Below, in pieces: positions 15,781-56,475 of a DNA stretch of 64,000 nt (the stretch's first letter is position 1; each line of letters starts with the position of its first letter). The position numbers and the translations under genes are program-made. A model generated the notes under the pieces. It had not been told where the DNA came from and did no database searches. It saw only the letters and a program-made list of their open reading frames with translations. Where the stretch lies: the IMG/VR virus record IMGVR_UViG_3300042516_005475, positions 1 through 64,000 of that record; one strand, given 5' to 3'.

Positions 15781-16467
15781 ATGTCATCCAAAACTCCAAA
15801 GACATTTAATGTAGCAGAGAAGTTTGAGCTTTCTGAAAATCACAAACGGATTGTAGATGCTATATTAGATAGAGACAATAAGCTTATCTTTATTGATGGA
15901 CCAGCAGGTTCAGCCAAGACATACTGTGCTGTATTAGCAGCCTTAAAACTTGTTCAAAGAAAGAGCTTCAAGAGCATTCTTTATTTGAGAAGCATTGCTG
16001 AATGTTCTAGTCAAAAACTAGGTTCATTACCTGGAGAGTTGCATGAGAAGATTGGTCCGTTTGGAGCCCCATTTTTGGAAAAGCTTAGCGAAATGATTTC
16101 AGAGGCTGCAATTACTAAGTTAGCATCTGAAAGCGCTTTAGATATTCAGCCTCTTAACTTCTTGAGAGGTACTACATTCCATGATAAGATTGTATTGCTA
16201 GATGAGGCTCAAAATGCTGAACTCGATCAGCTCATCATTGTTCTAACCCGTCTTGGAGAACACGGAAAGCTTGTTGTTATCGGAGATAGTAACCAAGTAG
16301 ATATTAGAGATAAGAAGAGCTACGGAAATGTTGTAGCTAAGTTTAATAGTGAGGAATGTAAGAGTGTTGGCATTCAATCCTTCACTCTCACAGAAGATGA
16401 TATTAAAAGAAGTAAGATCTTAAAGTTTATTGTTGGTAAGCTTAATGAACTTAAGTCTAACCGTTGA
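15781..16467 (+). CDS. phoH: PhoH-family ATPase
   Basis: GPAGSAKT, LGSLPGEL, FLRGTTF, LDEAQN, TRLGE, GDSNQVD. Confidence 0.9.
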   Translation: MSSKTPKTFNVAEKFELSENHKRIVDAILDRDNKLIFIDGPAGSAKTYCAVLAALKLVQRKSFKSILYLRSIAECSSQKLGSLPGELHEKIGPFGAPFLEKLSEMISEAAITKLASESALDIQPLNFLRGTTFHDKIVLLDEAQNAELDQLIIVLTRLGEHGKLVVIGDSNQVDIRDKKSYGNVVAKFNSEECKSVGIQSFTLTEDDIKRSKILKFIVGKLNELKSNR

Positions 16468-16675
16468 TGTGAAACTTAAGAGCTTTGGAAATCTTTTCCA
16501 TAATCTTTTTAGGATGATTTCCTTCTTTTAAAAGTCTATTGTACTCGCTTTTGAAGCTTGTAATAAACTCTTCAGACAACTTTAGATTTCTTGGATAAAA
16601 TAATCGAGACTGTGTTCTTAACGGGGCATAGTTCTCGAGTAATTTATTGAAGTTGTTATTGAATTCTTTCATCAT
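16457..16675 (-). CDS. Hypothetical late protein (N-terminus MMKEFNNNFNKLLE)
   Basis: TAAATA box just upstream; shares the N-terminal signal family. Confidence 0.6.
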   Translation of the reverse strand: MMKEFNNNFNKLLENYAPLRTQSRLFYPRNLKLSEEFITSFKSEYNRLLKEGNHPKKIMEKISKALKFHING

Positions 16676-16680
16676 AGTAT

Positions 16681-16896
16681 TTATTTTTTGCAATGAAAAT
16701 TTAAAAACCAATTAGACTGTGCTTTTGTATGAGCAGTAGCCTTTTTGGTTTTTAGCTTTCTAGCCTTGCTACAAGTCATCTTGCCTTTACCGAATTTCTT
16801 GGTAGCTTTAGCTTTAAGAGTACCTTTACCACCTCGCGGAGTGGTGCGGGTGGTTTTTTCTAAAAGAGTAAAAAATCTCTTTTCGTACTTGTTCAC
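16681..16896 (-). CDS. Small basic late protein
   Basis: Lys/Arg-rich; GTG start 6 nt after TAAATA. Confidence 0.65.
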   Translation of the reverse strand: MNKYEKRFFTLLEKTTRTTPRGGKGTLKAKATKKFGKGKMTCSKARKLKTKKATAHTKAQSNWFLNFHCKK

Positions 16897-16937
16897 TACA
16901 ATTATTTATTCTTTTTAGTTTGTTCGCGCCAAAGATA

Positions 16938-17516
16938 TTAGTTTATTTTTTTTAAAAACGTATATAAACTCTCCCAATTATAAACTCTATCCCCTGTCCA
17001 GTTTTTATTGTATGGGTGATCCATAATTATACTTCGCAACCCAACTTGTTTACCGCTTTCTGCATGAGAAACACTATCCTCTAACCAAAAATAATTTTTA
17101 TCCTTGTACTGAACTTTAAGAAAATCTAATTTACTTTTTTTAAAATCTAAACTACAATTAATATAGTCAAACACATCTCCAAATAGGTGTTTTAAATTGT
17201 TTACTCTTAACCTTTGAGCGTATTTGTCAATATGTAAACAACTGATAACTTCAAACCTCCAACCATCTTCTGCTAATTTTTTTACAAATTCTTGAGCATC
17301 TCGGAAAGGCGGAAGAAAACCAACTGCTCCACTTTCATTAAACCTTGATATACAATCTAAGGCTACCTCTTCAGGTAGCCCATATCTAGCACCTTGATAA
17401 AAAATGTGGTCGGTGTTAGGTAATCTTTCATAGCCTCGCTCACTCATCCATACATCGAAAGCAAAAGACCAGTCAAGTAAAACACCGTCACAATCAGTGA
17501 TTAATTTCTTATGCAT
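16938..17516 (-). CDS. HAD-family 5'(3')-deoxyribonucleotidase-like phosphatase
   Basis: TDCDGVL (DxDG), WLEDS, HPYN. Confidence 0.8.
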   Translation of the reverse strand: MHKKLITDCDGVLLDWSFAFDVWMSERGYERLPNTDHIFYQGARYGLPEEVALDCISRFNESGAVGFLPPFRDAQEFVKKLAEDGWRFEVISCLHIDKYAQRLRVNNLKHLFGDVFDYINCSLDFKKSKLDFLKVQYKDKNYFWLEDSVSHAESGKQVGLRSIIMDHPYNKNWTGDRVYNWESLYTFLKKIN

Positions 17517-19660: not shown

Positions 19661-20392
19661 TTAAACCTTGAGAGCTTTATTCCACAAGACCAATTGCAAT
19701 CGAGGACTAAAGTTAAAACCATGCTTCTTGCAAACCTCTGCTACCCAAGGAGCAACAGCATTATGCTCATCTCGAGAACCACAGCAAGGCATCAACCAAA
19801 TTTGATCTTCAGTAATACTAAAAGGTTTGATATACTTTTCGATAATCTCTTCAACATCACTATCTTTCTGCACAACAAACTTAAAGTAAGAGTAGATACT
19901 AGCGTGGTAAGCAATAACCTCTGGAACGTATCTCTTCTCTTCTGGATCTCCGTTAGTAGACAACTTAGGAGACACAGTAAAAGTAGCATTTATACTTTCC
20001 CAAAAACTTGAAGGATTAATCGTACAGTTAGTTTCAAAATCAATAACAGGATAGAAATCGAACTTTCTGAAAAAGGCTTCAATAAACTCAATCAAAGCCT
20101 TTTGCTGAATAAGAGGTTCACCACCAGTAATCTTAAGAACATGATTGCCTTTCAACTTATTTAGGTAATCATTATCTTCAAAGATCTTAAAGATCTCTTC
20201 AAAGGTTAGCTTATTCTTCTTAGACCAGCTAACATAGCTATCACAACCAAACGGAGAATCAGGAGACTTAAACCCGATGCAAGTCAAGTTGCACATTGCC
20301 AATCGCATGAAGATGCTTGGCTTACCAACCAAATGACCTTCACCTTCGATAGTTTCAAAGACAAAGTCATCAGAGAGAAATAATGAACTCAT
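19661..20392 (-). CDS. queE: 7-carboxy-7-deazaguanine synthase (radical SAM)
   Basis: FETIEGEG, FMRLAMCNLTC...CDS, ITGGEP, ETN, TVSPK, SPRLQ. Confidence 0.9.
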   Translation of the reverse strand: MSSLFLSDDFVFETIEGEGHLVGKPSIFMRLAMCNLTCIGFKSPDSPFGCDSYVSWSKKNKLTFEEIFKIFEDNDYLNKLKGNHVLKITGGEPLIQQKALIEFIEAFFRKFDFYPVIDFETNCTINPSSFWESINATFTVSPKLSTNGDPEEKRYVPEVIAYHASIYSYFKFVVQKDSDVEEIIEKYIKPFSITEDQIWLMPCCGSRDEHNAVAPWVAEVCKKHGFNFSPRLQLVLWNKALKV

Positions 20393-20422
20393 AATTTAAT
20401 GATATAGGAATCACTCTTAAGT

Positions 20423-21118
20423 TCAAGCCCATTTAGTACCAAAGTCCCAGGTACTAGGACGATTCTTACCACCGACTGGAACCCCTTGCGGAGGAGCATC
20501 AGTCTGCTTAGGGGTAACCCTAACTGGTTTATTTGTGTCATAAGCCAAGGCTTCAGTCTGCTTTTCAGACTTAGCAGGCGGAGCCCAGACAGGTTCAGCA
20601 GTCTTACCCTTCTTGCCTTTGCCTTTAGCAGGCGCAGCCTCAGCTTCATCAGCAACTTCTGCTGTAGATTCTTGAGCAGTTTCAGCAGAATAAATAGCAG
20701 AGTTCTTCTCATGCTCAAACACCTCAACAGAATGAGCTCGAACTCGACCGCTAGTCTTATGCTTCACGTAGCTATCTGCAGCATTAAAGCAATACTTTGC
20801 AAACAACTCAATTCCAACCCCTTCATCCATAACAACGATTGAGGCAGCTCCAGCCTTTTCAAGAGCCTCAAACTCTTTCATAGCAGGGTCATTCTTAGCA
20901 AGAACGAGAGTATGATCAAACTTCTCCTGCAAGAATCCCTTCAATTCGTCAAAGTCTCCGAAGTCAACAACCCAATTGTTGCCGTCAAGAGAATCAGAAG
21001 TAAACGTAAATTTACCAACCAATCGATAACCATGAATGAATCTGCAATGGGACTTTGCATTAGGCTGACGAAATGCAGCACTTCCGAGTTCAATAACCTT
21101 CGTGGAATAATATCTCAT
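20423..21118 (-). CDS. queD: 6-carboxy-tetrahydropterin synthase with a low-complexity C-terminal extension
   Basis: SHCRFIHGY, WVVDFG, FDHT, EHEKNSA; start trimmed to MRYYSTK. Confidence 0.85.
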   Translation of the reverse strand: MRYYSTKVIELGSAAFRQPNAKSHCRFIHGYRLVGKFTFTSDSLDGNNWVVDFGDFDELKGFLQEKFDHTLVLAKNDPAMKEFEALEKAGAASIVVMDEGVGIELFAKYCFNAADSYVKHKTSGRVRAHSVEVFEHEKNSAIYSAETAQESTAEVADEAEAAPAKGKGKKGKTAEPVWAPPAKSEKQTEALAYDTNKPVRVTPKQTDAPPQGVPVGGKNRPSTWDFGTKWA

Positions 21119-21157
21119 ACTCAGATATGTTATGAACATTTTTCCTAGAATCAAGCC

Positions 21158-21185
21158 TTGACTTGAACGAATTTGTCTCTATAAT
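21158..21185 (+). promoter_or_regulatory. Sigma70-type promoter of folE
   Basis: TTGACT-N16-TATAAT, with ATG 6 nt downstream. Confidence 0.7.
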
Positions 21186-21191
21186 AGGCGT

Positions 21192-21848
21192 ATGAATGAT
21201 GAGATTAGAGAGAAAGATTACCTCCTCCCGACTGCTAACAGTTCTATGGCTTTGACAGAAGAGCAAAAGCTTGCTATTATCGACAAGGGTGCTAAGGCAT
21301 ATGAGACTTTTTTGGATGCTCTTCGCATTGACTGGCGTAATGATCCGAATAGCGCAGGTACTCCTCGACGTGTTGCAAAGTCGTACGTGTTTGATTTAAT
21401 CTCTGGGTGCTATGAGGCTCCGCCGAAGATTACTTCTTTTCCTGCTGATGGTTATGATGGCATCGTCTCTCAGACGAATATTCCGTTGACTAGTATGTGT
21501 AGCCATCACCATTTGGCCTTTACTGGATTGGTGCATGTTGCTTATATTCCTAGTCTTGAAGGTCGTGTTATTGGCTTGAGTAAGCTCAATCGTATTGTTG
21601 AGTTTTATGGTCGTCGACCTCAGATTCAAGAAGGTTTGACGATGCAGATTCATAAGGCTATTAACGAGGTCTGCGAGCATAACAAGGGTGTTGCAGTTGT
21701 TGTTAAGGCTCAGCATACTTGTGCTTGTAATCGAGGTGTGAGACATCAAGGTTGTTATATGGTTACATCTAAGCTGTCTGGAGACTTCTATGATGACGAG
21801 AAGACTCGCAAGGAGTTTTACGACTTTATTAAAATGGCTGAAGAGTAG
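21192..21848 (+). CDS. folE: GTP cyclohydrolase I
   Basis: TPRRVAK, SMCSHH, GLSKLNRIV, RPQIQE, HTCACNRGV. Confidence 0.95.
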   Translation: MNDEIREKDYLLPTANSSMALTEEQKLAIIDKGAKAYETFLDALRIDWRNDPNSAGTPRRVAKSYVFDLISGCYEAPPKITSFPADGYDGIVSQTNIPLTSMCSHHHLAFTGLVHVAYIPSLEGRVIGLSKLNRIVEFYGRRPQIQEGLTMQIHKAINEVCEHNKGVAVVVKAQHTCACNRGVRHQGCYMVTSKLSGDFYDDEKTRKEFYDFIKMAEE

Positions 21849-22417: not shown

Positions 22418-22425
22418 ATAAAATT

Positions 22426-23532
22426 ATGAGTGATGATACATCTTTCGATATGGAGTTGCCAGACATTCCAATGCCTGGTCAAGAAATTAATACCGACATT
22501 GAAGACAAGATACAAGTAGGGTTTAAGTTTAGCTTTGTTGGAGCTGGTCAAGGTGGTTCAAGAATCGCTGAAACCTTTCACAAGCTTGGCTACAAGAGAA
22601 CCTGTGTGCTTAATACCGCTCAGCAAGACTTGGCAACAATTGAAGTTCCAAACAAGCTTAAGATTGGTACTGATTCTGGAGCAGGTAAGAATAGAGAAGT
22701 TGCTAAACAGGCTTTAATTGAACAGAGAGAAGATGTTCTTGATCTATTCAGAAAGTCTTTTGCTGGTAACTTTGATCGTATTTTTGTTTGCGCTGGTGCT
22801 GGTGGTGGTACTGGTTCTGGAACAACAACTGAGCTAATTAAGATTGCTAAAGACTACCAAGATTCAATTAAATCTACTTCTGAAAAGGTTGGTGTATTTT
22901 TAGCCTTGCCAAAGAACACTGAAGGTAAGAAGTGTGCTGAGAACGCTCTTAAGACTTTAACTGAGGTTCTTGAGCTCGTAGATCAAGGAATTGTTTCTCC
23001 ATTGGTTATTATTGATAATGAGAAGATTAATACAATCTATCCAAGATTGTCTATTAATCAGTTCTGGAATACTTCTAACAACAGCATCTGTTCTCTATTC
23101 AATCTATTCAATAACATTATTACAAAGAACAGTAGCTATACTTCTTTTGATAATAAGGATTATAAGACAGTGCTTGATAGTGGTATTATTGTATTCGGTG
23201 CAACCCAAGTTACTCAATGGTCTGACGGTACTGAGATTTCTAAAGCTATGAGAGATAACCTCAAGAAGAATATCTTGTCTGGTGGCATTGATCTCGGTAC
23301 TGGTAACATTGCTGCTGCAGTTGTTGTTGGAGATTCAAATGCTCTTGACAATATTCCACAAGAGTATCTTGATCAGGCTTTTGAGCAGCTTACCCGTACA
23401 TTGAAAAACAACTCAACTGTACACCAAGGTATCTATAAAGGTAACAAGGCTGGCTTGAGTATCTTTACTGCAATCGGTGGTTTAGGTAAACCAACCGCTA
23501 AAATAGAAGAGCTTAAGAAGTTATCTACTTAG
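22426..23532 (+). CDS. Tubulin/FtsZ-superfamily GTPase (TubZ/PhuZ/CetZ-like)
   Basis: VGAGQGGSRI (T1), GAGKN (T3), GAGGGTGSG signature, IIDNEK, FDNKD (T7-like). Confidence 0.9.
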   Translation: MSDDTSFDMELPDIPMPGQEINTDIEDKIQVGFKFSFVGAGQGGSRIAETFHKLGYKRTCVLNTAQQDLATIEVPNKLKIGTDSGAGKNREVAKQALIEQREDVLDLFRKSFAGNFDRIFVCAGAGGGTGSGTTTELIKIAKDYQDSIKSTSEKVGVFLALPKNTEGKKCAENALKTLTEVLELVDQGIVSPLVIIDNEKINTIYPRLSINQFWNTSNNSICSLFNLFNNIITKNSSYTSFDNKDYKTVLDSGIIVFGATQVTQWSDGTEISKAMRDNLKKNILSGGIDLGTGNIAAAVVVGDSNALDNIPQEYLDQAFEQLTRTLKNNSTVHQGIYKGNKAGLSIFTAIGGLGKPTAKIEELKKLST

Positions 23533-24151
23533 CCTTGTTGAGGATGTCGAATAAAGTTTTGGCATCCTCTTCACTTGTACCAGGTGGCAATGCAGCTTTA
23601 AAAGCATAATAATCACCAGCTTTAGCAAGGGCTCTTACTTTAGAGCCCTTTACTGTTTTTACATCATTAGGATCTATTTTACCCGACATTGCTCTTTCAC
23701 CACCTAGAGAAACAACACCAACCTTAGTTCCATCTCTCATTGGAGTCTTAAATGTTTCTTCGTTATCAGCTTTACGATCACTACCGCTAATTATGCTTAC
23801 AATAGGGTATTTTAAAACGTTGTGTAAGTAACCTGCAGCATGTTGAGGGGTAGTAATTCTATCATTTTCAACAACGTTAATATCTGCGTAGTTTGGATTG
23901 GTTTTAAATACAGATAGCCTTGCTTTGTATGGAACAGGGTTCTTATCTCCCTTTTCACTTGGAGATAAGAATACATAGAAGTCTGCGTTATTTTTATCTG
24001 CGTATTCTTTAGCGAGTTTAATTAGGTAGTCATGACCAGCTGTTGGAGGATGCATTCTTCCAAATATAAAGTATGCAGCATCTTTCTTCTGCTTAGAGTT
24101 TAAGTCTGCATGAGTTACAACTGCCTCGTATATCTCATTAAAGGTTTTCAT
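23525..24151 (-). CDS. Cytidylyltransferase-like (HxGH-type) nucleotidyltransferase
   Basis: FIFGRMHPPTAGH, KNP, GSDR, GSKVRA; family familiar from T4-like phages. Confidence 0.75.
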   Translation of the reverse strand: MKTFNEIYEAVVTHADLNSKQKKDAAYFIFGRMHPPTAGHDYLIKLAKEYADKNNADFYVFLSPSEKGDKNPVPYKARLSVFKTNPNYADINVVENDRITTPQHAAGYLHNVLKYPIVSIISGSDRKADNEETFKTPMRDGTKVGVVSLGGERAMSGKIDPNDVKTVKGSKVRALAKAGDYYAFKAALPPGTSEEDAKTLFDILNKAK

Positions 24152-24591
24152 TATTCGTCTCTAGTTTCAGCTGTATCTGTTTCAGATGGAATTTCAAGAA
24201 GACCAGCATCATCAATAACCTTCTTTAATACACCTAACATTTCTTCAGCGTTCTTGGCCGTTACTTTCTTAGTGAGTAAATTGGTTTGAAATCCACTAAG
24301 ATCAACTGTATTAGGATCTAACCAGAAGGCTTTTTTTATCAGGTTAATGAGATAGATTACACCTTCTGGGGTTGGTGTTTTATCTTCTTCCTCTTCTGGC
24401 TCGTCATCAATAGGAGTAGTTGCGTCTTGTGGCATTGGCATATCACCTGTTGCCAATGACTGTGGTCCTTCAGGAGCATCTCCAATTTGAGGAGAAGAAG
24501 GAATTGCGACACCACCTTCACCCTGTTCATTAATTTGAAGAAGGTATTTTACAACGGTAGCGTCAAAGGATGATATATTAGGCTTGGGCAT
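24151..24591 (-). CDS. Hypothetical acidic protein
   Basis: ORF coupled to neighbouring genes. Confidence 0.6.
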   Translation of the reverse strand: MPKPNISSFDATVVKYLLQINEQGEGGVAIPSSPQIGDAPEGPQSLATGDMPMPQDATTPIDDEPEEEEDKTPTPEGVIYLINLIKKAFWLDPNTVDLSGFQTNLLTKKVTAKNAEEMLGVLKKVIDDAGLLEIPSETDTAETRDE

Positions 24592-25039
24592 AGCTTACTC
24601 TTGGTCTATTTGGATTGTTTAAGGTTTCAACGTTATCGCTTACTACTGTCTTTGAAAGATTGGCTTCTTTATCTACATCCGGATTTAAGGAATTAACATT
24701 ACCAGTCTTCTTAATCTTACTCATGGTCTTTATCTTAGCAACAATTTCTTGCTCAGGCTGAGTCAAAGGCTTACCTACAGCTAGCTTGTTAATTGTAGTT
24801 CTGATATCACCTTCATTGTCCTGAAGTTGTAATCTTGCAATAGATCTTGGTGTACCAGCTCTAATTTTTGTCTTGTCAATATCTTGTTCTAAATCACCTG
24901 CATCCATCATACCTGGCAATGGTCTAATAGGGCTAGCATTAGGATTAATACCTGTATTGCCTGATTGGCCGAAAGTACCTGCTGACGAATACTCAAGAAG
25001 ACTGTAGTATTTGTTAAGAGTTTCCTCAAATTTACTCAT
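24578..25039 (-). CDS. Hypothetical late protein (N-terminus MSKFEETLNKYYSLLE)
   Basis: TATAAATA 5 nt before ATG 25039. Confidence 0.65.
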   Translation of the reverse strand: MSKFEETLNKYYSLLEYSSAGTFGQSGNTGINPNASPIRPLPGMMDAGDLEQDIDKTKIRAGTPRSIARLQLQDNEGDIRTTINKLAVGKPLTQPEQEIVAKIKTMSKIKKTGNVNSLNPDVDKEANLSKTVVSDNVETLNNPNRPRVSYAQA

Positions 25040-26014: not shown

Positions 26015-26547
26015 ACTACACCTGTCCCGGTAATATGTCCGATGTGGGAAATATCTTCTTTTTTGTGAATAATATTATTCCAAAAAGCTCTCATTTCATT
26101 ATTAAGATGGATATCATCAAATAATAAAAGCCCTTTATAGTTAATCTTTATAAGCCAATCATAAAAAAGCTTTTCATGTATACCATTATGATCAGTATCA
26201 TACATTATAAATGGAGAATTTTTAATTAAATCCTCTCTTAAAAGAACATCTCCTATTATAAATGTGTAATTACTTGGAAGGGTACAAGTAATACTATTAT
26301 TTAAATCAAAACCAGTTACCTTATTTTCAATATTTTCACTTAATGCGCAACCAGACATACCTTTTAAAACACCAACTTCAACCAATGAGGTTTTATTAAA
26401 TTGGTAACCTAACCAAACAAGTAGCCTATAATGCTCAATTCCAGCTTGCATTGGTATATACTTTGCGTAATCATCTTCCTTTGGAATTCTATTAAGAACA
26501 CCAGACATGTCAATACTATCAAGATCTTCTTTGGATGGCCAATTCAT
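26005..26547 (-). CDS. Class I SAM-dependent methyltransferase-like protein
   Basis: VEVGVLKGMSG, YDTDH, GLLLFDDI, TGTGVV. Confidence 0.65.
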   Translation of the reverse strand: MNWPSKEDLDSIDMSGVLNRIPKEDDYAKYIPMQAGIEHYRLLVWLGYQFNKTSLVEVGVLKGMSGCALSENIENKVTGFDLNNSITCTLPSNYTFIIGDVLLREDLIKNSPFIMYDTDHNGIHEKLFYDWLIKINYKGLLLFDDIHLNNEMRAFWNNIIHKKEDISHIGHITGTGVVWM

Positions 26548-26767
26548 ATTTTTTCTTTTTCTTATTTAGCGATTTGGGTCTTTTATTCAATCTAGTAGAA
26601 CCTTTTGGAAATACCTGACGAGCGTCGTTACTGGCATACCAGTCTGTAGTTTGAATGGCATTACCAAAGCTACCCATACCACCCGGAGCATATGCATTTC
26701 CAAATGATGAATTAGTACCTCCAGCTAGGTTCATTTCAGAAAAGAATCTTTTTTCGTATGAGAGCAT
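26519..26767 (-). CDS. Small late protein (N-terminus MLSYEKRFFSE)
   Basis: TAAATA 5 nt before ATG 26767. Confidence 0.6.
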   Translation of the reverse strand: MLSYEKRFFSEMNLAGGTNSSFGNAYAPGGMGSFGNAIQTTDWYASNDARQVFPKGSTRLNKRPKSLNKKKKKYELAIQRRS

Positions 26768-27227: not shown

Positions 27228-28666
27228 CGGTTTTAACCATTGATGTTGATAACAGACGTAATACTGCTTCTTTAAGTGGAGACTTTAAAGCAGTTAGAGA
27301 ACACTTCTCTATAAAAAATAAGACTGCTGTCTTTGCTCGTAAACGGGGTTTCTTTGCACCGGAAAGAACATATGTTATTACACCAACTGGTAGAATAGAA
27401 CCTCATTTCCATACTGTTCTTCAAAAATACGCTCAACAAAGTGAAGACCCAACTGAAATTGTCTTAACAGAGAGCTTTAAAAAGTTATTCTCACCCAAAT
27501 TAAAGCTAGACTACCTTGATAAGAAATTACGTCTTGATTTACGTGATTATCAAACCGATGTAGTCCAAACTGCTTTAAAATCTGGTTTTGGTATTATCGA
27601 GTTAGCAACCGCGGGTGGCAAGACTCTCATAATGTCTTCTATCCTAGAAAACATTTATCATCAAAACCCAAACTTTAAATGTCTTCTCATTGTGCCTGAT
27701 TTAGGTCTTGTTAATCAATCGTTTAATGACTTTAAAGATTATAACGTTAGCTTTACTTATAGTACTTGGACAGGTAGTTCTGAGTTGGATTTAAGTACAA
27801 ATGTAATTATTGCTAATATGGGTATCTTACAATCTGAGATATCCGATACTGAATGGACGGAAAGCGTTGATCTTCTCATTGTTGACGAGGTTCACAAAGT
27901 TCGTAGAGGCAATAAGATCAACGACATTATTAAAAAGATCTATACTATTCATAAGTTTGGCTTTACTGGTACCTTGCCTGAAGAGGTATTAGATCAATGG
28001 AATATTTTTGCTAAGTTTGGAGATAGAATTTATTCCAAGATGTCTCACGAGCTAAAGTCTGAGAGTTATGTTACTCCAGCCAAGGTAACTGCTCTTGTTA
28101 TTAATTATAAAACTGGCCCTCAATTTGAAAGAACTAAAGACAGCACACCAGCTGATGAGTATATTGCTGAGCTGAAGTTCTTGCTAACAAACGATTTTCG
28201 TAATGGGGTTATCAATCACCTAGTTAACAAGTTTGACAATAACTCTCTTGTTCTTGTGGACTTAATTGACCACGGTCAAGCCATTTATGATAAAATTACT
28301 ACAAGCTCTACTACTAAAGAGGTTTATTTCATCAGAGGTGAAGTAGAAGTAGAAGAACGTAAGAGAGTTCAGACCTTAATGGAGAAGCAAACTAACGTTT
28401 GTGTAATTGCTATCTCTAAAATATTTTCGACAGGTATTAATATCAAAAATCTTCACTATTTAATCTTTGCTGGAGGTGGAAAAGCGAAGGTAAAGATAGT
28501 ACAATCAATAGGTCGTGGATTACGATTACACGAAGATAAGAAAGAGCTTATCATTATTGACATTGCTGATAACCTAAAGTATGGCATGCAGCACTATCAA
28601 AAAAGAAAGCAGCTTTACAATCAAGAGAAAATACCACATACCTTTACTAACTGCCATGAAAAATAA
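27224..28666 (+). CDS. uvsW: SF2 DNA helicase, UvsW-like
   Basis: LRDYQ, ATAGGKT, DEVH, GFTGT, STGINI, QSIGRGLR. Confidence 0.92.
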   Translation: MTVLTIDVDNRRNTASLSGDFKAVREHFSIKNKTAVFARKRGFFAPERTYVITPTGRIEPHFHTVLQKYAQQSEDPTEIVLTESFKKLFSPKLKLDYLDKKLRLDLRDYQTDVVQTALKSGFGIIELATAGGKTLIMSSILENIYHQNPNFKCLLIVPDLGLVNQSFNDFKDYNVSFTYSTWTGSSELDLSTNVIIANMGILQSEISDTEWTESVDLLIVDEVHKVRRGNKINDIIKKIYTIHKFGFTGTLPEEVLDQWNIFAKFGDRIYSKMSHELKSESYVTPAKVTALVINYKTGPQFERTKDSTPADEYIAELKFLLTNDFRNGVINHLVNKFDNNSLVLVDLIDHGQAIYDKITTSSTTKEVYFIRGEVEVEERKRVQTLMEKQTNVCVIAISKIFSTGINIKNLHYLIFAGGGKAKVKIVQSIGRGLRLHEDKKELIIIDIADNLKYGMQHYQKRKQLYNQEKIPHTFTNCHEK

Positions 28667-29162
28667 TTTACCAAAAATTAAGAAACCTGAAACCTTTGTG
28701 ATGGATCCAACATCCAAGCCACCCAAAGAACAATTTTACGTTGATCCTAAAGAGTTTTATAGGCAGATAAAAGACTATTATAAGAGCGGAGAAATAAACG
28801 ATTATTTGGCAGAATCTATCTATAAGATTGCAAAAGGTCTTTCTTACGCACCTAATTTTATTAATTATTCTTATCGAGACGACATGGTTGGTGATGCTGT
28901 CGTAAAGATGTATACAGCCCTAAAGAATAAGAAGTTTAACGTTAAGACCAAGGATAAAAACGGCTACAATTATAACCCGTTTAGTTACTTTACAACCATT
29001 GCATTCCACGCATTTATCACTAGAATTAAGAAAGAAAAGAAAGAGAAAGACACTATAGCCCTTTATCAAGAAGCGCAGTTTAGAGAGGCTATGCAATCCT
29101 TACCTAACGGTGATTGTGTTTATATCGATCCTGACAGGGAAGATAATTATAACGAAGCCTAG
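28656..29162 (+). CDS. gp55: Late transcription sigma factor, gp55-like
   Basis: IAKGLSYAPNFINYSYRDDMVGDA, NPFSYFTTIAFHAFITRIKKEK. Confidence 0.92.
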   Translation: MKNNLPKIKKPETFVMDPTSKPPKEQFYVDPKEFYRQIKDYYKSGEINDYLAESIYKIAKGLSYAPNFINYSYRDDMVGDAVVKMYTALKNKKFNVKTKDKNGYNYNPFSYFTTIAFHAFITRIKKEKKEKDTIALYQEAQFREAMQSLPNGDCVYIDPDREDNYNEA

Positions 29163-47972: not shown

Positions 47973-49023
47973 CGATTACGCTGTTCAAAAGTTTTTACAA
48001 TTTGCTGGTTATCCAAAGTTCAAGCGCCACACTCAAGTTTATGAGGGTGGCTGCCCTACTTGTAGAGAAGGTAATTCTTGGGGTAGAAAGAGACGTTTAT
48101 ATTTCATTACCAAGAAGAATCTCATTTGTTGTCACAATTGTGGTTTGAGTCTTTCAACCTATAGCTGGGTTAAAGAGGTGTGTAAGTTGTCTGATAAAGA
48201 CATTCTCAAAGAGCTGTCAGAGAGAGATTTCTTACTCACAGATATTGTTTCTGCTCCCGAGCAGAAATCTGAGAATGAGCAGACAATTAAAAAGCAAAGT
48301 GCTCTGCCTGAGGATAGTATTAATCTTAGCGATCAGAACCAAATAGAATATTACAAGAACGAACCAGGTGTTAAGGCTGCCTTAGAATACATAAAAGAAC
48401 GTAAGCTTGACGTGGCATGTAACAAGCCAAAGGACTTCTGGATCTCTCTTAAAGACCCTATTCATAAGAATCGTTTAGTTATTCCATTCTATGATAAAGG
48501 TAAGATTGTATATTATCAGACTCGTACAATTATTGAGAATAATACTAAACACTTCCCGAAGTATCTTAGTAAAATGGGAGCTCAAAAGACATTGTTTAAT
48601 ATTGACAATGTAGATGCATCTAATGAGAATTACTTTGTATTTGAAGGACCGATCAATGCTTGCTTTAGTAAGAACAGTATAGCTGTTGCTGGTATTCAGG
48701 AGAGTAGCAAAAAGAACTTTACTGATTTACAAGAACAGCAATTGAAAAGATTGTTCTTAATGAAGAGAGTCTGGGTTCTAGATAGTCAATGGTTAGATAA
48801 TGCTAGTAGAAAGAAGAGTAAGATCTTGCTTGATCAAGGAGAGACTGTGTTTATTTGGCCTAAAGAATATGGTACTGTGTTCAAGGACTTTAATGACATT
48901 TCAAAAAAATTGAACCTTTCCGAGATTCCAGAAAGGTTCATTCTTGATAATAGTTATGATAAGCTTAAAGGTAACGTTAAGCTGGGTATTATTAATTATT
49001 CTTCGTCGCTAGAGAGCATGTAA
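47956..49023 (+). CDS. gp61: DNA primase, gp61-like
   Basis: CPTC...CHNC Zn ribbon, RLVIPF, YYQTR, VFEGPIN, KDFND; start trimmed to MRVLPND. Confidence 0.88.
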   Translation: MRVLPNDYAVQKFLQFAGYPKFKRHTQVYEGGCPTCREGNSWGRKRRLYFITKKNLICCHNCGLSLSTYSWVKEVCKLSDKDILKELSERDFLLTDIVSAPEQKSENEQTIKKQSALPEDSINLSDQNQIEYYKNEPGVKAALEYIKERKLDVACNKPKDFWISLKDPIHKNRLVIPFYDKGKIVYYQTRTIIENNTKHFPKYLSKMGAQKTLFNIDNVDASNENYFVFEGPINACFSKNSIAVAGIQESSKKNFTDLQEQQLKRLFLMKRVWVLDSQWLDNASRKKSKILLDQGETVFIWPKEYGTVFKDFNDISKKLNLSEIPERFILDNSYDKLKGNVKLGIINYSSSLESM

Positions 49024-49427
49024 CCCTTGAAAGATTCAGTCAAAGAAGACATTTCTTGGGCTAATCTTGCGATTCTCTTTCTTTCACCTCTTGCGATTTC
49101 AGCAAATAAGGTACCTTCACCAGCATCATTTAATACCTTTTGAATAGAGTTATTGTCAACTCCATTTAGGTATGATGTGAAATTTGTTAGTTTGTCAATC
49201 CACTGCCCTAATTGCTGCACTTGCTTTTCTCTAATTTGATTTTCAGGAGATACAGCTGGTGCACCGGTTGGGGTATTTGTATCAAAATCTCCTGGGTTTG
49301 TGCCGTCATCCAATGAAGCAGCAAAAGCGTCTTCATCACCAATATCGTCTGGTTTAACGTCTAGTTCTGGATTTTCTGGCTCGTCTTGTTCTAACAGATG
49401 AAAAACTCTGTGATTAAATGCTTTCAT
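48996..49427 (-). CDS. Hypothetical acidic late protein (N-terminus MKAFNHRVFHLLE)
   Basis: Divergent from 49447 across a palindromic late box. Confidence 0.65.
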   Translation of the reverse strand: MKAFNHRVFHLLEQDEPENPELDVKPDDIGDEDAFAASLDDGTNPGDFDTNTPTGAPAVSPENQIREKQVQQLGQWIDKLTNFTSYLNGVDNNSIQKVLNDAGEGTLFAEIARGERKRIARLAQEMSSLTESFKGYMLSSDEE

Positions 49428-49431
49428 AGCT

Positions 49432-49443
49432 ATAAATATTTAT
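49432..49443. promoter_or_regulatory. Palindromic bidirectional late promoter ATAAATATTTAT
   Basis: Two overlapping TAAATA boxes in a 19-bp divergent gap. Confidence 0.65.
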
Positions 49444-49446: not shown

Positions 49447-49818
49447 ATGAAACGACTTTTATTCGAGGATATGGATATGTATTACAACAAATACAATGCC
49501 AATGTCGCTGCTCGAGATCTCAAGCCACCCACACATACTTTACAAGACTTACTAAACTATTTCACTAATCAATATCCAAACATTATTAGAGCACCTAAGC
49601 AGTACCCTGCTCCTCTAATTAATGCTGATACTAAGACTCTTGAAATGTATAACTTGGTATTAGATCTAAAGTCTAATATTCAGGCCTCTATGGGCAACCC
49701 AGTTATTAGAAAAAACCCTAAGTTACTAGCCAGAGCCAGCCATGCAGTTAAGTTATTGAACAGTGTGTTAAAGAGTATTATGACAGTTGATAAATTGCTC
49801 ATACATTATAAAATCTAG
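49447..49818 (+). CDS. Hypothetical late protein (N-terminus MKRLLFE)
   Basis: ORF after TATAAATA. Confidence 0.65.
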   Translation: MKRLLFEDMDMYYNKYNANVAARDLKPPTHTLQDLLNYFTNQYPNIIRAPKQYPAPLINADTKTLEMYNLVLDLKSNIQASMGNPVIRKNPKLLARASHAVKLLNSVLKSIMTVDKLLIHYKI

Positions 49819-51649: not shown

Positions 51650-51985
51650 TTACTTCTTTAAGTAGAAAGATTTTTGTTGTGGGTTATATCCAATATAAAT
51701 GCCGCTTGTACTTAACTGCTTTTCGTTTTGGCCAGGTTTAAAGTCTTTTAAATTGTATTTTTTAAGAATGTCTTGAGCAGTTAAGTTGGAAATATTTAAC
51801 ATGCCATTTCTTTGCTTCTTTAGTTTATCAACCTCAGGAGCATCATTTGGATCTTTCTTTTTGTAATTTGGGACTAAATTAGCGTGCAATCTAGAATCAG
51901 AATCTGTACCGGTTTGGATTCTAGTTTTGAGCTTGTCTTGTACTTTAACAATTTGCTCGAAAAAATATTTTTCGTATAGATTCAC
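51650..51985 (-). CDS. Hypothetical late protein (N-terminus MNLYEKYFFE)
   Basis: TAAATA 5 nt before GTG. Confidence 0.6.
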   Translation of the reverse strand: MNLYEKYFFEQIVKVQDKLKTRIQTGTDSDSRLHANLVPNYKKKDPNDAPEVDKLKKQRNGMLNISNLTAQDILKKYNLKDFKPGQNEKQLSTSGIYIGYNPQQKSFYLKK

Positions 51986-52016
51986 GTAATTATTTATGAT
52001 TTAAGTAGCAGTAAAC

Positions 52017-52070: not shown

Positions 52071-52958
52071 TTATACCTGAAATAGTTCTTGGCCTGGCTT
52101 TGTGATCTTGCTGTGAGGCTGTGGCTTACCCTTGGTGTTAGTCATAGCGTTTACAGCTGGCTGAGTGTTGTGTTGCTTTGGATCAGCCTGTACATTTGGA
52201 ATCTTACCATTGTCGGCCTTGCCAGTTGAAGCAGCATAACCTGGAGCGCTTGGCTGTGGCTTACCCTTGGTGTTAGTCATAGCGTTTACAGCTGGCTGAG
52301 TGTTGTGAACCTTTGGTTCTGGCTCACTAACAATGGCCTCTTCTGGCATATCTTGGCCACCTTCATACATTGCACCCTCGTCAGCGTCCTCGAGACCTTC
52401 TTCACCCTCATCTTCATCACCGAAATCATCTTCACCTTCAGCTGCTTCTTCGCCAGCTAGAGATGCCTTGAGATCAGAGAGAGCTGAAATAATATCTTCA
52501 ATCTTTTGAGCTAGATCACCGTGCGCACCAGCAGTAGCTCCGAGGTTTTCCATGCCATCATTGAGATCGGCATCCATTTCCATATCACCGGCGCCGTCAG
52601 CACCTAGAGTTACATCTAGATCTTCGTCACCCATGACATTTTCGAATAATTCATCAAATTTGTTTTTTTGAGATTTCATAGTGTTGCTTCTGAAATTATT
52701 TATGCTCTCCTTTAGCTTTTTTCTAGCCTTTTTAATCTTTTTCTTGCCCTTAGAGCCTTTTGATGGCTCATAGGCCTTAGCCATTACAGGGTCTTTATCG
52801 TCAACATAAGAGGCCTTTGAATTGGCTGAATAATGCGGAGCATCCTTAGGTGTTACAAGGTCTTTCTTAACCTTTGCATCACCGGTAATTTTGAATGGTT
52901 CAAGGAGTTTTTCAAATCCAGGAAATGAGTGAACTACATCTTCTGATAGATCTTTCAT
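52071..52958 (-). CDS. Acidic low-complexity late protein, possible prohead core/internal protein
   Basis: Start trimmed to MKDLSED, since the track start overlaps terminase; D/E-rich centre and duplicated C-terminal motif. Confidence 0.6.
   Translation of the reverse strand: MKDLSEDVVHSFPGFEKLLEPFKITGDAKVKKDLVTPKDAPHYSANSKASYVDDKDPVMAKAYEPSKGSKGKKKIKKARKKLKESINNFRSNTMKSQKNKFDELFENVMGDEDLDVTLGADGAGDMEMDADLNDGMENLGATAGAHGDLAQKIEDIISALSDLKASLAGEEAAEGEDDFGDEDEGEEGLEDADEGAMYEGGQDMPEEAIVSEPEPKVHNTQPAVNAMTNTKGKPQPSAPGYAASTGKADNGKIPNVQADPKQHNTQPAVNAMTNTKGKPQPHSKITKPGQELFQV
52117..52307. repeat. Perfect 56-bp direct repeat (52117-52172 and 52252-52307)
   Basis: Identical ggctgtggcttaccc...gagtgttgtg; encodes HNTQPAVNAMTNTKGKPQP twice. 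Confidence 0.9.
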
Positions 52959-52978
52959 AAATAGTTTTAAATATTTAT

Positions 52979-55741: not shown

Positions 55742-55749
55742 ATATTAAC

Positions 55750-56058
55750 ATGAAGTACGACATACTTGTACAACAATTATTAACAGAAGCTAAAAAGGGA
55801 CCATCTTTGTCTATTAAACGTGGAGAGAAATTACCAGTTAGCAAAGGAGCAGGTTTAACTGCTAAGGGTAGAGCCAAGTATAATAGAGCCACAGGCAGTA
55901 AATTAAAGGCTCCTGTAACTGGTAAAGTAAAGAAAGGTTCTAAAGCATCTAAGAGACGCAAGAGTTTCTGTTCAAGATCCAAGGCCTGGATACCATCTGG
56001 TGGTTGCGCAGGTAAGGATACAAGAGGTTGTGCAGCTCGTAGAAGATGGAAATGCTAA
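55750..56058 (+). CDS. Small basic late protein (N-terminus MKYDILVQQLLTE)
   Basis: TAAATA 5 nt before ATG; GLTAKGRAKYN...RRKSFCSR...RRRWKC. Confidence 0.7.
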   Translation: MKYDILVQQLLTEAKKGPSLSIKRGEKLPVSKGAGLTAKGRAKYNRATGSKLKAPVTGKVKKGSKASKRRKSFCSRSKAWIPSGGCAGKDTRGCAARRRWKC

Positions 56059-56059
56059 T

Positions 56060-56212
56060 ATGAAATTCGACGATATTATAAATCAAATATTATCCGAAAA
56101 ACAAGATAGATGTTATCACCGAGCTGTCCAGGCTTACGGTAAAAAGACGTCTGCTTATAGATCAGCAGCAATGGTAAAGTGTAGAAAAGGTAAAATTTGG
56201 AAGAAGAAATGA
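56060..56212 (+). CDS. Small basic protein (N-terminus MKFDDIINQILSE)
   Basis: DRCYH...TSAYRSAAMVKCRK. Confidence 0.6.
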   Translation: MKFDDIINQILSEKQDRCYHRAVQAYGKKTSAYRSAAMVKCRKGKIWKKK

Positions 56213-56475
56213 AAAACTTTATTTCATTTAAAGCCTTTTTTGAAGCTTCAGATAATTTGCATCAATGGTTTAAACGCAAGGCAAAAGACCCAAAAACAGG
56301 TAAAACCTTTCATGGTTGGGTAAATTGTAAAACTGGCGGGCCTTGTGGTAGAAAATCAAAGAGCTCAGGAGGTAGTTATCCTGCTTGTAGACCTACAAAA
56401 GCTGCTTGTAATTCTATAAAAGGGAGCATGTATAAAAAGAAAGGTTCTAAGCGAGTTAATTGGAAAAAGAAATAA
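56209..56475 (+). CDS. Small basic Cys-containing protein (N-terminus MKNFISFKAFFE)
   Basis: LHQWF...WVNCKTGGPCGR...YPACRP. Confidence 0.65.
   Translation: MKNFISFKAFFEASDNLHQWFKRKAKDPKTGKTFHGWVNCKTGGPCGRKSKSSGGSYPACRPTKAACNSIKGSMYKKKGSKRVNWKKK

What the first reader, a model, noticed from the sequence alone, without database searches (positions are those of the whole stretch)
16457..56475. About a dozen unrelated late proteins share a capsid-targeting-like N-terminal signal: a candidate injected-protein repertoire
Seen N-termini: MKEFNNNFNKLLE (16672), MNKYEKRFFTLLE (16896), MKTFNEIYE (24151), MSKFEETLNKYYSLLE (25039), MLSYEKRFFSE (26767), MKAFNHRVFHLLE (49427), MKRLLFE (49447), MNLYEKYFFE (51985), internal MKSQKNKFDELFE (52679), MKYDILVQQLLTE (55750), MKFDDIINQILSE (56060), MKNFISFKAFFE (56209). 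The sequences diverge completely after the Glu, and nearly all lie behind a TAAATA box. Known: T4 internal proteins carry an approximately 10-aa capsid-targeting sequence (MKTYQEFIAE-like) that gp21 cleaves after hydrophobic-x-Glu, and they are then injected; IPI inhibits a host restriction nuclease. Inference: a dispersed, modular tag-plus-cargo system delivers many uncharacterised effectors at infection.
Basis: partly seen in the sequence, partly recalled or inferred. Interest (0 to 1): 0.85.

Follow-up and report, generated by a model that had tools for sequence, protein, structure and literature searches.

The report
Capsid-targeting-like leaders on late phage proteins
An uncultured T4-like phage puts a short, exchangeable N-terminal tag that ends in leucine/isoleucine-x-glutamate on about thirteen otherwise unrelated late proteins; this is most likely the known T4 way of loading proteins into the capsid and trimming them with the head protease, seen here in a distant lineage with a larger set of cargos.

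Summary
All 12 quoted N-termini are at the stated coordinates. Nine sit directly behind an ATAAATA box and three are translationally coupled in late operons. I found a 13th (24151-24591). The window is a divergent T4-like phage that encodes a Peptidase_S77 head protease, a T4-type scaffold, a gp55-type late sigma factor and a gp45-type clamp.

Within the window alone, enrichment of the motif is modest (p 0.15 for the a-priori T4 rule; 0.01-0.05 for stricter rules). The comparative evidence is strong:
- Divergent orthologues (28-59% identity) always keep [L/I/F]-x-Glu at the end of the leader.
- Orthologues with 79-93% identical cargo carry different leaders, and the junction falls exactly at the Glu.
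- Two adjacent genes in a relative share promoter plus 11 codons, then nothing.
- Two cargo families occur without the tag in podoviruses and with it on large contigs, of which the two inspected carry T4-like genes.

This is best read as T4-type capsid-targeting propeptides cleaved by the head protease. The principle has been known for T-even phages since the 1990s, so this is a new member of a known kind with a larger repertoire.

Packaging, cleavage, injection and any anti-defence role are untested. The three acidic proteins, two with homologues in distant relatives, look more like prohead-core components than effectors.

The parts
16457..16672 (-). c16672: 71-aa late protein with a 13-aa leader ending L-L-E; mature part basic (pI 10.1)
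   Evidence: ATAAATA box at 16678-16684, 5 nt before this ATG. A 56%-identical orthologue (L040) keeps the pattern, ending I-L-E.
16681..16896 (-). c16896: 71-aa late protein (GTG start) with a 13-aa leader ending L-L-E; mature part Lys-rich (pI 11.4)
   Evidence: Box at 16903-16909. Its leader shares a six-residue core with c26767 and, in part, c51985, with synonymous codon differences. 88%-identical orthologues have a changed leader on the same cargo.
23525..24151 (-). c24151: 208-aa HxGH nucleotidyltransferase with a 9-aa leader ending I-Y-E, the leader closest in pattern to those of the T4 internal proteins
   Evidence: PHROG cytidyltransferase, 1.6e-24, with the match starting at residue 18. 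AF2 model pLDDT 86; nearest folds are NaMN/NMN adenylyltransferases, TM 0.55-0.6. F4 and E9 are invariant and position 7 is always I or L in 14 homologues of 57-95% identity. No box of its own; its start overlaps the stop of 24151-24591.
   Evidence: Orthologues at 49% identity (L040-L042) keep the F-D-A...I-D-E pattern and there have their own ATAAATA box.
24578..25039 (-). c25039: 153-aa late protein with a 16-aa leader ending L-L-E; first gene of the late operon 25039->23525
   Evidence: Box at 25045-25051, 5 nt before the ATG. 39%-identical orthologues keep a 16-aa leader ending L-Y-E.
26519..26767 (-). c26767: 82-aa late protein made of a leader (ends F-S-E), a copy of the capsid-protein segment that spans the predicted maturation site, and a Lys-rich tail
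   Evidence: Box at 26773-26779. It aligns to MCP residues 49-111: E=3e-11 without composition correction and 0.018 with it. A 35%-identical orthologue has a 13-aa leader ending I-L-E.
48996..49427 (-). c49427: 143-aa late protein with a 13-aa leader ending L-L-E; mature part acidic (pI 4.1)
   Evidence: Box at 49437-49443. A 40%-identical orthologue in L005 keeps a leader ending L-V-E.
49447..49818 (+). c49447: 123-aa late protein with a 7-aa leader ending L-F-E that resembles the protease's own N-terminus
   Evidence: Box at 49432-49438. Five of 12 N-terminal positions match gp21. A 27%-identical homologue at the syntenic site in L005 keeps the leader.
49432..49443 (.). 12-nt palindrome holding two overlapping divergent late-promoter boxes that serve c49427 and c49447
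51650..51985 (-). c51985: 111-aa late protein (GTG start) with a 10-aa leader ending F-F-E, directly upstream of the gp14-like head-closure gene
   Evidence: Box at 51991-51997, 5 nt before the GTG. Only close orthologues were found, so this is a weaker case.
52071..52679 (-). c52679: 202-aa acidic protein (pI 4.1) made from an internal in-frame start with its own late box inside the 295-aa ORF 52071-52958; 13-aa leader ending L-F-E
   Evidence: Box at 52697-52703. The nesting and the internal boxed start recur in L005, L012, L015, L017 and L022, where the leaders end L-Y-E or L-F-E.
55750..56058 (+). c55750: 102-aa protein made of a 13-aa leader (ends L-T-E) and a DUF6321 domain; pI 11.5, 4 Cys
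   Evidence: Pfam DUF6321, 2.6e-16. Box at 55738-55744. The L038 orthologue has 93% identical cargo and an unrelated leader ending I-L-E. Of the 120 best of more than 7900 homologues, 81 have no leader and 37 have an extension, 32 of which contain a hydrophobic-x-Glu motif (mostly ending 4-6 residues before the domain anchor).
56060..56212 (+). c56060: 50-aa protein made of a 13-aa leader (ends L-S-E) and a small Cys/Lys-rich domain
   Evidence: The L038 orthologue has a longer, different leader ending L-Q-E on 85% identical cargo. The same domain sits behind I-L-S-E in Flavobacterium phage immuto gp084.
56209..56475 (+). c56209: 88-aa protein made of a 12-aa leader (ends F-F-E) and a Cys-rich basic domain
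   Evidence: The L037/L038 orthologues have 79% identical cargo and a different 9-aa leader, with the junction at the Glu. Among 117 homologues there are tag-bearing forms with many different leaders, all ending hydrophobic-x-E just before the conserved cargo start, and tag-less forms.
2215..2889 (-). gp21-type prohead protease, the presumed processing enzyme; its own N-terminus carries L-V-E at residues 6-8
   Evidence: Pfam Peptidase_S77, 2e-33; phrog_207, 2e-56.
1161..2066 (-). gp22-type scaffolding core protein, the presumed docking partner of the leaders
   Evidence: Pfam T4_CASP, 33.2 bits against a cut-off of 27; phrog_237.
1..1089 (-). N-terminal 363 residues of the gp23-type major capsid protein (runs off the window), with candidate maturation sites L-L-E and I-E-E before the Gly-rich mature N-terminus
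28581..29162 (+). gp55-type late sigma factor, which supports reading the ATAAATA boxes as T4-type late promoters
   Evidence: phrog_234, 7.8e-27. A gp45-type clamp lies at 44401-45138.

Best explanation
The leaders are T4-type capsid-targeting propeptides.

Proposed mechanism:
1. Late in infection the proteins are made from gp55-type promoters.
2. The short amphipathic N-terminal segment (aromatic near position 4, hydrophobic residues at about i+4 and i+7/8) docks them onto the gp22-type scaffolding core while the prohead assembles on the portal.
3. After the gp23 shell closes, the Peptidase_S77 protease cuts after the Glu of [L/I/F]-x-E. This frees the mature protein inside the head, and the leader peptide leaves.

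The cargos are mixed:
- Small, very basic Lys-rich proteins (c16896, c55750, c56060, c56209, and the tail of c26767) that probably stay with the DNA and leave with it.
- Acidic proteins (c49427, c52679, x24591) that more probably serve as prohead-core or scaffold components.
- At least one enzyme, an NMN/NaMN-adenylyltransferase-like nucleotidyltransferase (c24151).

Shown here: the motif, its position, its link with late promoter boxes, the presence of the protease, scaffold and late sigma factor, and the modular leader-cargo junction at the Glu.

Inferred: docking, cleavage, packaging, ejection, and any effect on the host.
For: Machinery present: Peptidase_S77 at 2e-33, T4_CASP scaffold, portal, gp55-type sigma, gp45-type clamp.

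Motif matches the T4 rule:
- Published rule: gp21 cuts after L/I-x-E, and the propeptides are 10-19 residues with targeting residues 4 and 7 (PMC9026906).
- In the 13 window leaders P3 is L (8), I (2) or F (3), median length is 13, and 10 of 13 have an aromatic residue at positions 3-5.
- The phage's own protease, scaffold and capsid protein carry the same motif near their N-termini.
- T4's known substrates, read from the fetched genome, show the same layout.
- A model trained on the window ranks T4 ipI first of 137 T4 ORFs, and ipII and ipIII 11th and 12th.

Conservation: every family with orthologues of 28-59% identity keeps hydrophobic-x-Glu at the end of the leader, even through indels. 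In the c24151 family F4 and E9 are invariant.

Modularity:
- Two neighbouring genes in L022 share the promoter and 32 of 33 leader nucleotides, then are unrelated.
- The L037/L038 copies of c55750, c56060 and c56209 have 79-93% identical cargo but different leaders joined at the Glu.
- The DUF6321 and c56209 families occur tag-less in podoviruses and tagged on large contigs, two of which carry T4-like genes.
- A 208-kb T4-like contig carries about ten such genes within 10 kb.

Statistics.
Against: - There are no proteomic or experimental data for this phage or any close relative. The closest cultured phages match the sheath at only 38-40% identity, and only over its C-terminal ~40%.
- The a-priori motif is not significantly enriched within the window alone (p=0.15).
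- The motif is degenerate. The gp32-like SSB at 42897 and a few other non-late proteins match it.
- Simple position-weight models separate candidates from background poorly.
- P3 is Phe in three leaders, which the T4 rule does not cover.
- The number of tagged proteins in related contigs is much larger than T4's eight known substrates, so some may use the tag for something else.
Confidence: 0.65

Rival explanations
1. The tag is real and does target the prohead, but most of the proteins are assembly components (core or scaffold pieces, DNA-condensing internal proteins) that are degraded, expelled or merely structural. On this view it is not a repertoire of injected effectors that act on the host.
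For: - Three cargos are strongly acidic (pI 4.1). Two of them (c49427, c52679) have homologues at 27-40% identity in relatives whose TerL is 51-59% identical. c52679 sits at a fixed place next to TerL and is nested in a longer ORF.
- c26767 copies a capsid-protein segment.
- T4 gp67 and gp68 are tagged core proteins of this type (PMC9026906).
- In L017 the tagged genes lie next to the scaffold gene and the 45-aa ORF that in the window sits between protease and scaffold.
Against: - Several cargos are poorly conserved, vary between relatives or move between genome positions (c55750, c56060 and c56209 lie elsewhere in L037/L038). That is typical of accessory rather than core functions.
- One cargo is an enzyme (c24151), and a relative appears to tag a Nudix-like protein.
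- The T4 precedents IPI, IPIII and Alt act in the host (PMC3012670, PMC9391042).
Confidence: 0.3
2. The leader is a real, selected N-terminal module that serves a different purpose from capsid loading. Possibilities are binding to another late assembly or localisation system (the phage encodes a TubZ-like tubulin) or acting as a regulated-stability tag.
For: - Related contigs carry very many tagged genes, including proteins of 270-370 aa and enzymes, more than any T4-type head is known to hold.
- A tubulin homologue is late-expressed at 22426-23532.
- Nothing here shows packaging.
Against: - The leader always ends in the motif that T4-type head proteases cut.
- The protease, scaffold and capsid protein of the same genome carry the motif.
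- c26767's leader aligns with the capsid protein's own propeptide end.
- No other system is known to read such a tag.
Confidence: 0.1
3. There is no signal. The resemblance comes from AT-rich codon usage (Lys, Phe, Asn, Tyr, Leu), from constraints on the first codons of leaderless late mRNAs, and from a very common three-residue motif.
For: - Hydrophobic-x-Glu at positions 7-20 occurs in about a third of all proteins here (19/57 non-late).
- The late genes have no room for a 5' leader, so their first codons may be under nucleotide-level selection.
- The gp32-like protein is a look-alike.
Against: - Late structural genes with the same promoter spacing (capsid protein, portal, 8162, 22426, 60349) lack the motif.
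- Operon-internal genes that are not at an mRNA 5' end have it.
- Shared leaders differ at synonymous sites.
- Leader swaps and tag-less homologues put the boundary exactly at the Glu.
- Enrichment repeats in distant loci (p=7e-5 and p=0.0015).
Confidence: 0.05

Closest known systems
Capsid targeting sequences of phage T4 internal proteins IPI, IPII, IPIII and Alt, and the propeptides of gp24, gp67, gp68 and gp21 (Mullaney and Black 1996; reviewed in PMC9026906 and PMC3012670)
   Same: - A short N-terminal leader on late proteins, with an aromatic or hydrophobic residue near position 4.
- The leader ends in L/I-x-Glu, the site cut by the S77 head protease.
- Cargos are unrelated to each other.
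- Protease, scaffold and late sigma homologues are present.
- The leader of c24151 is close in pattern to those of the T4 internal proteins.
   Different: - The typical leader is 13 residues, with hydrophobic positions at about 4, 8, 11 and 12; T4's best-studied leader has 10.
- Phe is accepted at P3.
- At least 13 tagged proteins lie in 64 kb of a 230-kb genome, against about eight in all of T4.
- The cargos matched no PHROG or Pfam family annotated as an internal virion protein; they were not compared directly with T4 IPI-III or Alt.
- Nothing has been tested experimentally.
Polymorphic internal-protein loci of T-even phages (Repoila et al. 1994, as cited in PMC3012670)
   Same: Different ORFs behind the same late promoter and conserved leader. 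The L022 pair and the leader swaps in L037/L038 are of this kind.
   Different: Here the cassette logic is seen in a lineage only distantly related to the T-even phages. It involves cargo families that are widespread without the tag in podoviruses. I could not read the 1994 paper, so the comparison rests on the reviews.
Propeptide-bearing head and ejection proteins of giant phages (phiKZ, 201phi2-1, SPN3US; PMC5694885)
   Same: Many head proteins are processed after Glu by a diverged gp21 homologue. Conserved N-termini occur on diverged paralogues. The internal protein load is large.
   Different: Those phages use S/A-x-E, and most of their propeptides exceed 100 residues. Here P3 is L, I or F and the leaders are 7-22 residues.

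Membership tests
T4-type capsid-targeting-sequence / internal-protein system | Genome encodes a gp21-type (Peptidase_S77) prohead protease | tested here: met
   2215-2889: Pfam PF03420 at 2e-33 (116 bits, cut-off 27); phrog_207 at 2e-56.
T4-type capsid-targeting-sequence / internal-protein system | Genome encodes a gp22-type scaffolding core onto which tagged proteins load | tested here: met
   1161-2066: Pfam T4_CASP at 33.2 bits (cut-off 27); phrog_237 at 1.9e-6.
T4-type capsid-targeting-sequence / internal-protein system | N-terminal propeptide of about 7-20 residues ending in L/I-x-Glu | tested here: met
   13 leaders of 7-22 residues (median 13). P3 is L in 8, I in 2 and F in 3; P1 is always Glu. 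The three with Phe fall outside the strict T4 rule.
T4-type capsid-targeting-sequence / internal-protein system | Aromatic or hydrophobic targeting residues in the N-terminal half of the leader (positions 4 and 7 in T4 IPIII) | tested here: met
   An aromatic residue at positions 3-5 in 10 of 13 window leaders and 26 of 38 external leaders. F4 is invariant in the c24151 family.
T4-type capsid-targeting-sequence / internal-protein system | Late expression from gp55-dependent TATAAATA-type promoters | tested here: inconclusive
   There are boxes in front of 9 of 12 candidates, and the rest are in the same operons. A gp55 homologue scores 7.8e-27. The box-to-start spacing is highly non-random. 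Transcription itself cannot be tested here.
T4-type capsid-targeting-sequence / internal-protein system | Leader conserved or exchangeable while cargos are unrelated (modular junction) | tested here: met
   No similarity between cargos. The L022 pair shares only the promoter and 11 codons. Leader swaps on 79-93% identical cargo. Tagged and tag-less forms exist in two cargo families.
T4-type capsid-targeting-sequence / internal-protein system | Proteins are incorporated into proheads and cleaved after the Glu | not testable with these tools
   This needs virion proteomics or an in-vitro protease assay. No cultured close relative exists.
T4-type capsid-targeting-sequence / internal-protein system | Mature proteins are ejected into the host with the DNA | not testable with these tools
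   Experimental only.
T4-type capsid-targeting-sequence / internal-protein system | Cargo homologous to T4 IPI, IPII, IPIII or Alt (not required for the mechanism) | tested here: not met
   No candidate matched a PHROG or Pfam family annotated as an internal virion protein. Only c24151, c55750 and c56060 matched clearly, c56209 only weakly, and all to other families.
Giant-phage (phiKZ/SPN3US-type) processed ejection proteins | S/A-x-Glu cleavage motif and mostly long (>100 residue) propeptides | tested here: not met
   P3 is L, I or F and never S or A; leaders are 7-22 residues. The motif definition is from PMC5694885.
Sec/Tat-type signal peptides | Uninterrupted hydrophobic core of about 10-15 residues after a basic N-region | tested here: not met
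   Direct reading of the leaders. Each contains several charged or polar residues and ends in Glu, and none has a hydrophobic stretch of that length. No signal-peptide predictor was run.

The most novel reading that the evidence does not exclude
In a large clade of uncultured T4-like phages with genomes of roughly 120-230 kb, the tag works as a freely recombining delivery cassette. It has been attached to dozens of cargos per genome, including enzymes (an NMN/NaMN-adenylyltransferase-like protein, and a protein that reads as a Nudix hydrolase) and domain families that travel untagged in podoviruses. If so, the packaged and injected proteome of uncultured phages, with its first-response anti-defence factors, could be read directly from sequence. 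A packaged NAD-pathway enzyme would be a pre-loaded answer to NAD-depleting defences.
Probability: 0.25. Interest if true: 0.75.

Novelty: new member of a known kind. Interest (0 to 1): 0.5.

Why it matters
Proteins injected with phage DNA are the first phage factors a cell meets. In T4 two of them are linked to host-specific infection: IPI blocks a restriction nuclease and IPIII is needed on one E. coli strain (PMC3012670, PMC9391042). They are hard to find because their sequences are unrelated.

If the tag described here marks capsid-loaded proteins in environmental T4-like phages, it gives a sequence-only handle on that hidden class in uncultured viruses. It also yields a list of small cargo proteins to test against defence systems, and a second, divergent targeting sequence for protein-packaging applications.

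The principle itself is established, so the gain is in breadth rather than concept.

Tried and rejected
**Identity of the window**
- Megablast of 48 kb (window 16000-64000) against cultured phages gave no match.

**Family and homology searches on the candidates**
- PHROG and Pfam scans of the candidates: nine had no match. Only c24151, c55750 and c56060 matched clearly, and c56209 only weakly (E 0.0015).
- A PDB sequence search for c24151 gave only spurious tubulin hits at E 0.2-0.3.
- The homologue search for c24151 found only the same environmental lineage.

**Motif models**
- A two-block position-weight model with leave-one-out scoring overlapped the background. The scaffold and the gp32-like protein scored as high as true candidates.
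- An external Glu-anchored model, trained on 34 leaders from two cargo families, captured one leader subtype and missed the F...F..LLE subtype. Even so, 6 of 86 genes scored 4 or more against 0.8% of controls.
- Applying the window model to T4 put ipI first but ipII and ipIII only 11th-12th, partly through a block that did not force Glu. I count this as weak support.

**Enrichment and alignment**
- The a-priori T4 rule showed no significant enrichment in the window alone.
- The capsid-protein alignment with T4 gp23 did not place the T4 cleavage site on a Glu in this phage, so the maturation site stays a prediction.
- BLAST of the candidates against T4 gp21-24, gp67 and gp68 gave only compositional matches between acidic tails.

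**Cultured phages and literature**
- Flavobacterium phage immuto turned out not to be T4-like (PolA, DnaB). I did not check its protease, so its fused protein is only a pointer.
- The 1994 paper on T-even polymorphic loci is not held.
- The literature search for leaderless late mRNAs in T4-like phages found nothing relevant.

**Rejected reading**
- Signal peptide or membrane anchor, because the leaders are charged and short.


Full report
**What the window is.** The window equals positions 1-64000 of a 230-kb IMG/VR contig. It has no nucleotide match among cultured phages. Its tail sheath is closest to those of T4-like cyanophages, at 38-40% amino-acid identity over its C-terminal ~40%.

It encodes a T4-type head module on the minus strand at the left end:
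- the capsid protein, whose N-terminus is at 1089;
- a T4_CASP scaffold at 1161-2066;
- a Peptidase_S77 protease at 2215-2889;
- gp4-like and gp13-like connector proteins;
- the portal at 4265-6076.

It also encodes T4-type replication and recombination genes, a gp55-type late sigma factor (28581-29162) and a gp45-type clamp. A second morphogenesis block lies at 50.8-62.8 kb, with a gp14-like protein, TerL, sheath and tube.

**Checking the observation.**
- All twelve peptides are present as quoted.
- Nine have an ATAAATA box 2-17 nt upstream.
- 24151, 56060 and 56209 have no box, but each start overlaps or abuts the stop codon of the preceding leader-bearing late gene, so they are operon members.
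- The sequences after the Glu are unrelated by BLAST.
- I added one candidate, 24151-24591. Its 22-residue leader ends I-N-E and is conserved in pattern in 49%-identical orthologues, which there have their own box.

**Is it more than chance?**

In the window alone the answer is only cautious:
- The rule taken a priori from T4 (L/I-x-Glu with the Glu at positions 7-20) is met by 9 of 28 box-preceded genes and 11 of 57 others, p=0.15. Hydrophobic-x-Glu is simply common.
- Stricter rules give p of 0.01-0.05, but they were shaped by the candidates.
- A blind all-against-all comparison of N-termini is more telling. Three of the four best pairs (six identities in twelve positions) join late candidates. 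One pair joins c49447 to the protease's own N-terminus.
- A non-late look-alike exists, the gp32-like SSB at 42897.

In loci whose anchor proteins are 51-85% identical to the window's, the association repeats:
- 15 of 41 small box-preceded genes against 12 of 136 others, p=7e-5.
- With the aromatic-plus-motif rule, 11 of 45 against 8 of 132, p=0.0015.

**Comparative evidence.** This is what convinces me.

1. *Conservation.* In every family with orthologues of 28-59% identity the leader keeps its pattern and ends in hydrophobic-x-Glu, even where its length changes. In 14 homologues of c24151 (57-95% identity), F4 and E9 are invariant and position 7 is always I or L.
2. *The Glu is a module boundary.*
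   - Two adjacent genes in L022 share the promoter box and 32 of the first 33 coding nucleotides, and nothing after the eleventh codon.
   - The L037/L038 copies of c55750, c56060 and c56209 have 79-93% identical cargos but different leaders, with the switch exactly at the Glu.
3. *Shared leaders on unrelated cargos within the window.* c16896 and c26767 share a six-residue leader core, and c51985 has five of the six. The codons differ at synonymous sites, so selection acts on the peptide.
4. *Two natural experiments.*
   - DUF6321, the cargo of c55750, has more than 7900 homologues. Among the best 120, 81 start with a short basic stretch directly before the domain. Thirty-seven carry an extension, 32 of which contain a hydrophobic-x-Glu, most of them ending 4-6 residues before the domain anchor.
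   - Among cultured phages the hits are mostly podoviruses (Pelagibacter HTVC010P-type, T7-like cyanophages), where the match begins within the tag-less query. I did not inspect their N-termini. In the cyanomyovirus S-CRM01 the domain ends a 516-residue protein next to TerL, preceded by V-K-E-E.
   - The c56209 family behaves the same way. There are many different leaders, all ending hydrophobic-x-Glu one to four residues before the conserved cargo start. Tag-less forms occur on contigs of at most 68 kb, one with an SU10-type portal, and the cultured hits include Roseobacter phages of 52-58 kb, where the match begins at or after the junction residue.
   - Tagged forms lie on 78-208 kb contigs, and the two inspected carry T4-like genes.
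   - One such contig has about ten tagged genes within 10 kb. They include homologues of c26767 and c24151 and of the three-gene run c55750, c56060, c56209.

**Link to the head protease.** The published T4 rule is that gp21 cuts after L/I-x-Glu, and the propeptides of internal proteins are 10-19 residues with targeting residues at 4 and 7 (PMC9026906).
- The window leaders have L, I or F at P3, a median length of 13, and an aromatic residue at positions 3-5 in 10 of 13.
- The phage's own protease, scaffold and capsid protein carry the motif near their N-termini.
- c26767 aligns with the capsid protein across its predicted maturation site, so its Glu corresponds to the end of the capsid propeptide. 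The composition-corrected E-value for this is only 0.018.
- T4's substrates, read from the fetched genome, have the same layout.
- The leader of c24151 is close in pattern to those of the T4 internal proteins.

**What the cargos are.**
- Nine mature parts are basic (pI 9.3-11.5). Four of these are small, Lys-rich and Cys-containing.
- Three are acidic (pI 4.1). c52679 is made from an internal boxed start inside a 295-residue ORF. That nesting recurs in five distant loci next to TerL, which suggests an assembly role like T4 gp67/gp68.
- c24151 folds as an HxGH nucleotidyltransferase. The model has pLDDT 86, and the nearest structures are NaMN/NMN adenylyltransferases at TM 0.55-0.6. The leader lies outside the fold.

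**Verdict.** The best explanation is a T4-type capsid-targeting propeptide system (confidence 0.65). Whether the mature proteins are injected, and whether any acts on host defences, is not addressed by any result here. For the acidic, conserved members a core or scaffold role is more likely.

The principle has been known since the 1990s, including the point that T-even internal proteins are diverse and share only the targeting sequence (PMC3012670, PMC9026906). I therefore file this as a new member of a known kind. Its features of interest are a larger repertoire, a distinct leader consensus, and cargo families that exist untagged elsewhere.

Noticed in passing
window-wide; for example 1087-1101(-), 6074-6088(-), 8160-8174(-), 11435-11449(-), 22414-22428(+), 60337-60351(+), 62763-62777(+): The late-promoter box sits exactly 5 nt before the start codon of many late genes, including the capsid protein and the portal. 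ATAAATA-N5-ATG/GTG occurs 12 times against 0.77 expected, and 3 of the 12 use GTG. In T4 the same box lies 13-32 nt upstream. Late mRNAs of this lineage are therefore probably leaderless, with no room for a Shine-Dalgarno sequence. I found no description of this in the held literature.
   Followed up: partly
49432-49443 and 52957-52978: Divergent late genes share compact back-to-back promoters. A 12-nt palindrome holds both boxes for c49427 and c49447. A similar pair serves TerL and the 295-aa ORF on the opposite strand.
   Followed up: no
52979-55741 (+): The large terminase is 920 aa because it carries an insertion of about 350 aa with LAGLIDADG/homing-endonuclease domains, that is, an intein. 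Relatives with 96% identical TerL have a 570-aa protein without it (L007, L009, L018).
   Followed up: partly
22426-23532 (+): A tubulin/FtsZ-family protein with a TubZ-like C-terminal domain (Pfam Tubulin 1.8e-17) sits behind a late box in a T4-like genome. It is conserved at 78-100% identity in 19 related contigs.
   Followed up: partly
26519-26767 (-) and 1-1089 (-): c26767 is a small late protein made of a leader, a roughly 45-residue copy of the capsid-protein segment around its predicted maturation site (Gly-rich, ending D-W-Y-A..D-A-R), and a Lys-rich tail. It may mimic the capsid protein's N-terminal arm. Homologues exist in L040-L042 and L053.
   Followed up: partly
52071-52958 (-): Nested genes: a 295-aa ORF with its own late box contains an in-frame internal start, with a second late box, that yields the 202-aa acidic c52679. 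The arrangement recurs in five distant loci, always divergent from TerL. The N-terminal part matched no family.
   Followed up: partly
L051:3764-4234 (Flavobacterium phage vB_FspM_immuto_2-6A gp084): In this cultured, non-T4-like myovirus one ORF fuses a c56060-like domain and a c56209-like domain. Each is preceded by a stretch ending L-x-E, as if it were a polyprotein cut at both junctions. I did not check whether the phage has a Glu-specific head protease.
   Followed up: partly
L046:211-1761 (Synechococcus phage S-CRM01 g34): In this T4-like cyanophage, DUF6321 is the C-terminal domain of a 516-aa protein immediately upstream of TerL. In the window the DUF6321 gene lies immediately downstream of TerL. 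The repeated neighbourhood with the terminase is unexplained.
   Followed up: no
42897-43781 (+): The gp32-like single-strand-binding protein has an N-terminus (aromatic at position 4, M-F-E at 8-10) that scores like a leader. It is either a chance look-alike or an unexplained shared feature.
   Followed up: no
L017:2558 (-), 141 aa; L053:10712-11122: Relatives attach the same kind of leader to other enzyme-like cargos: one that reads as a Nudix hydrolase (by eye, not tested) and one with a weak RimB-like Pfam hit.
   Followed up: no
19661-21848 and 37595-38311: Genes whose N-terminal sequences read like 7-deazaguanine (queuosine-precursor) synthesis enzymes (QueE, QueD, FolE, QueC). This points to modified DNA. 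I did not test them with a family search in the window. Related contig L053 shows GTP_cyclohydroI and PTPS hits.
   Followed up: no
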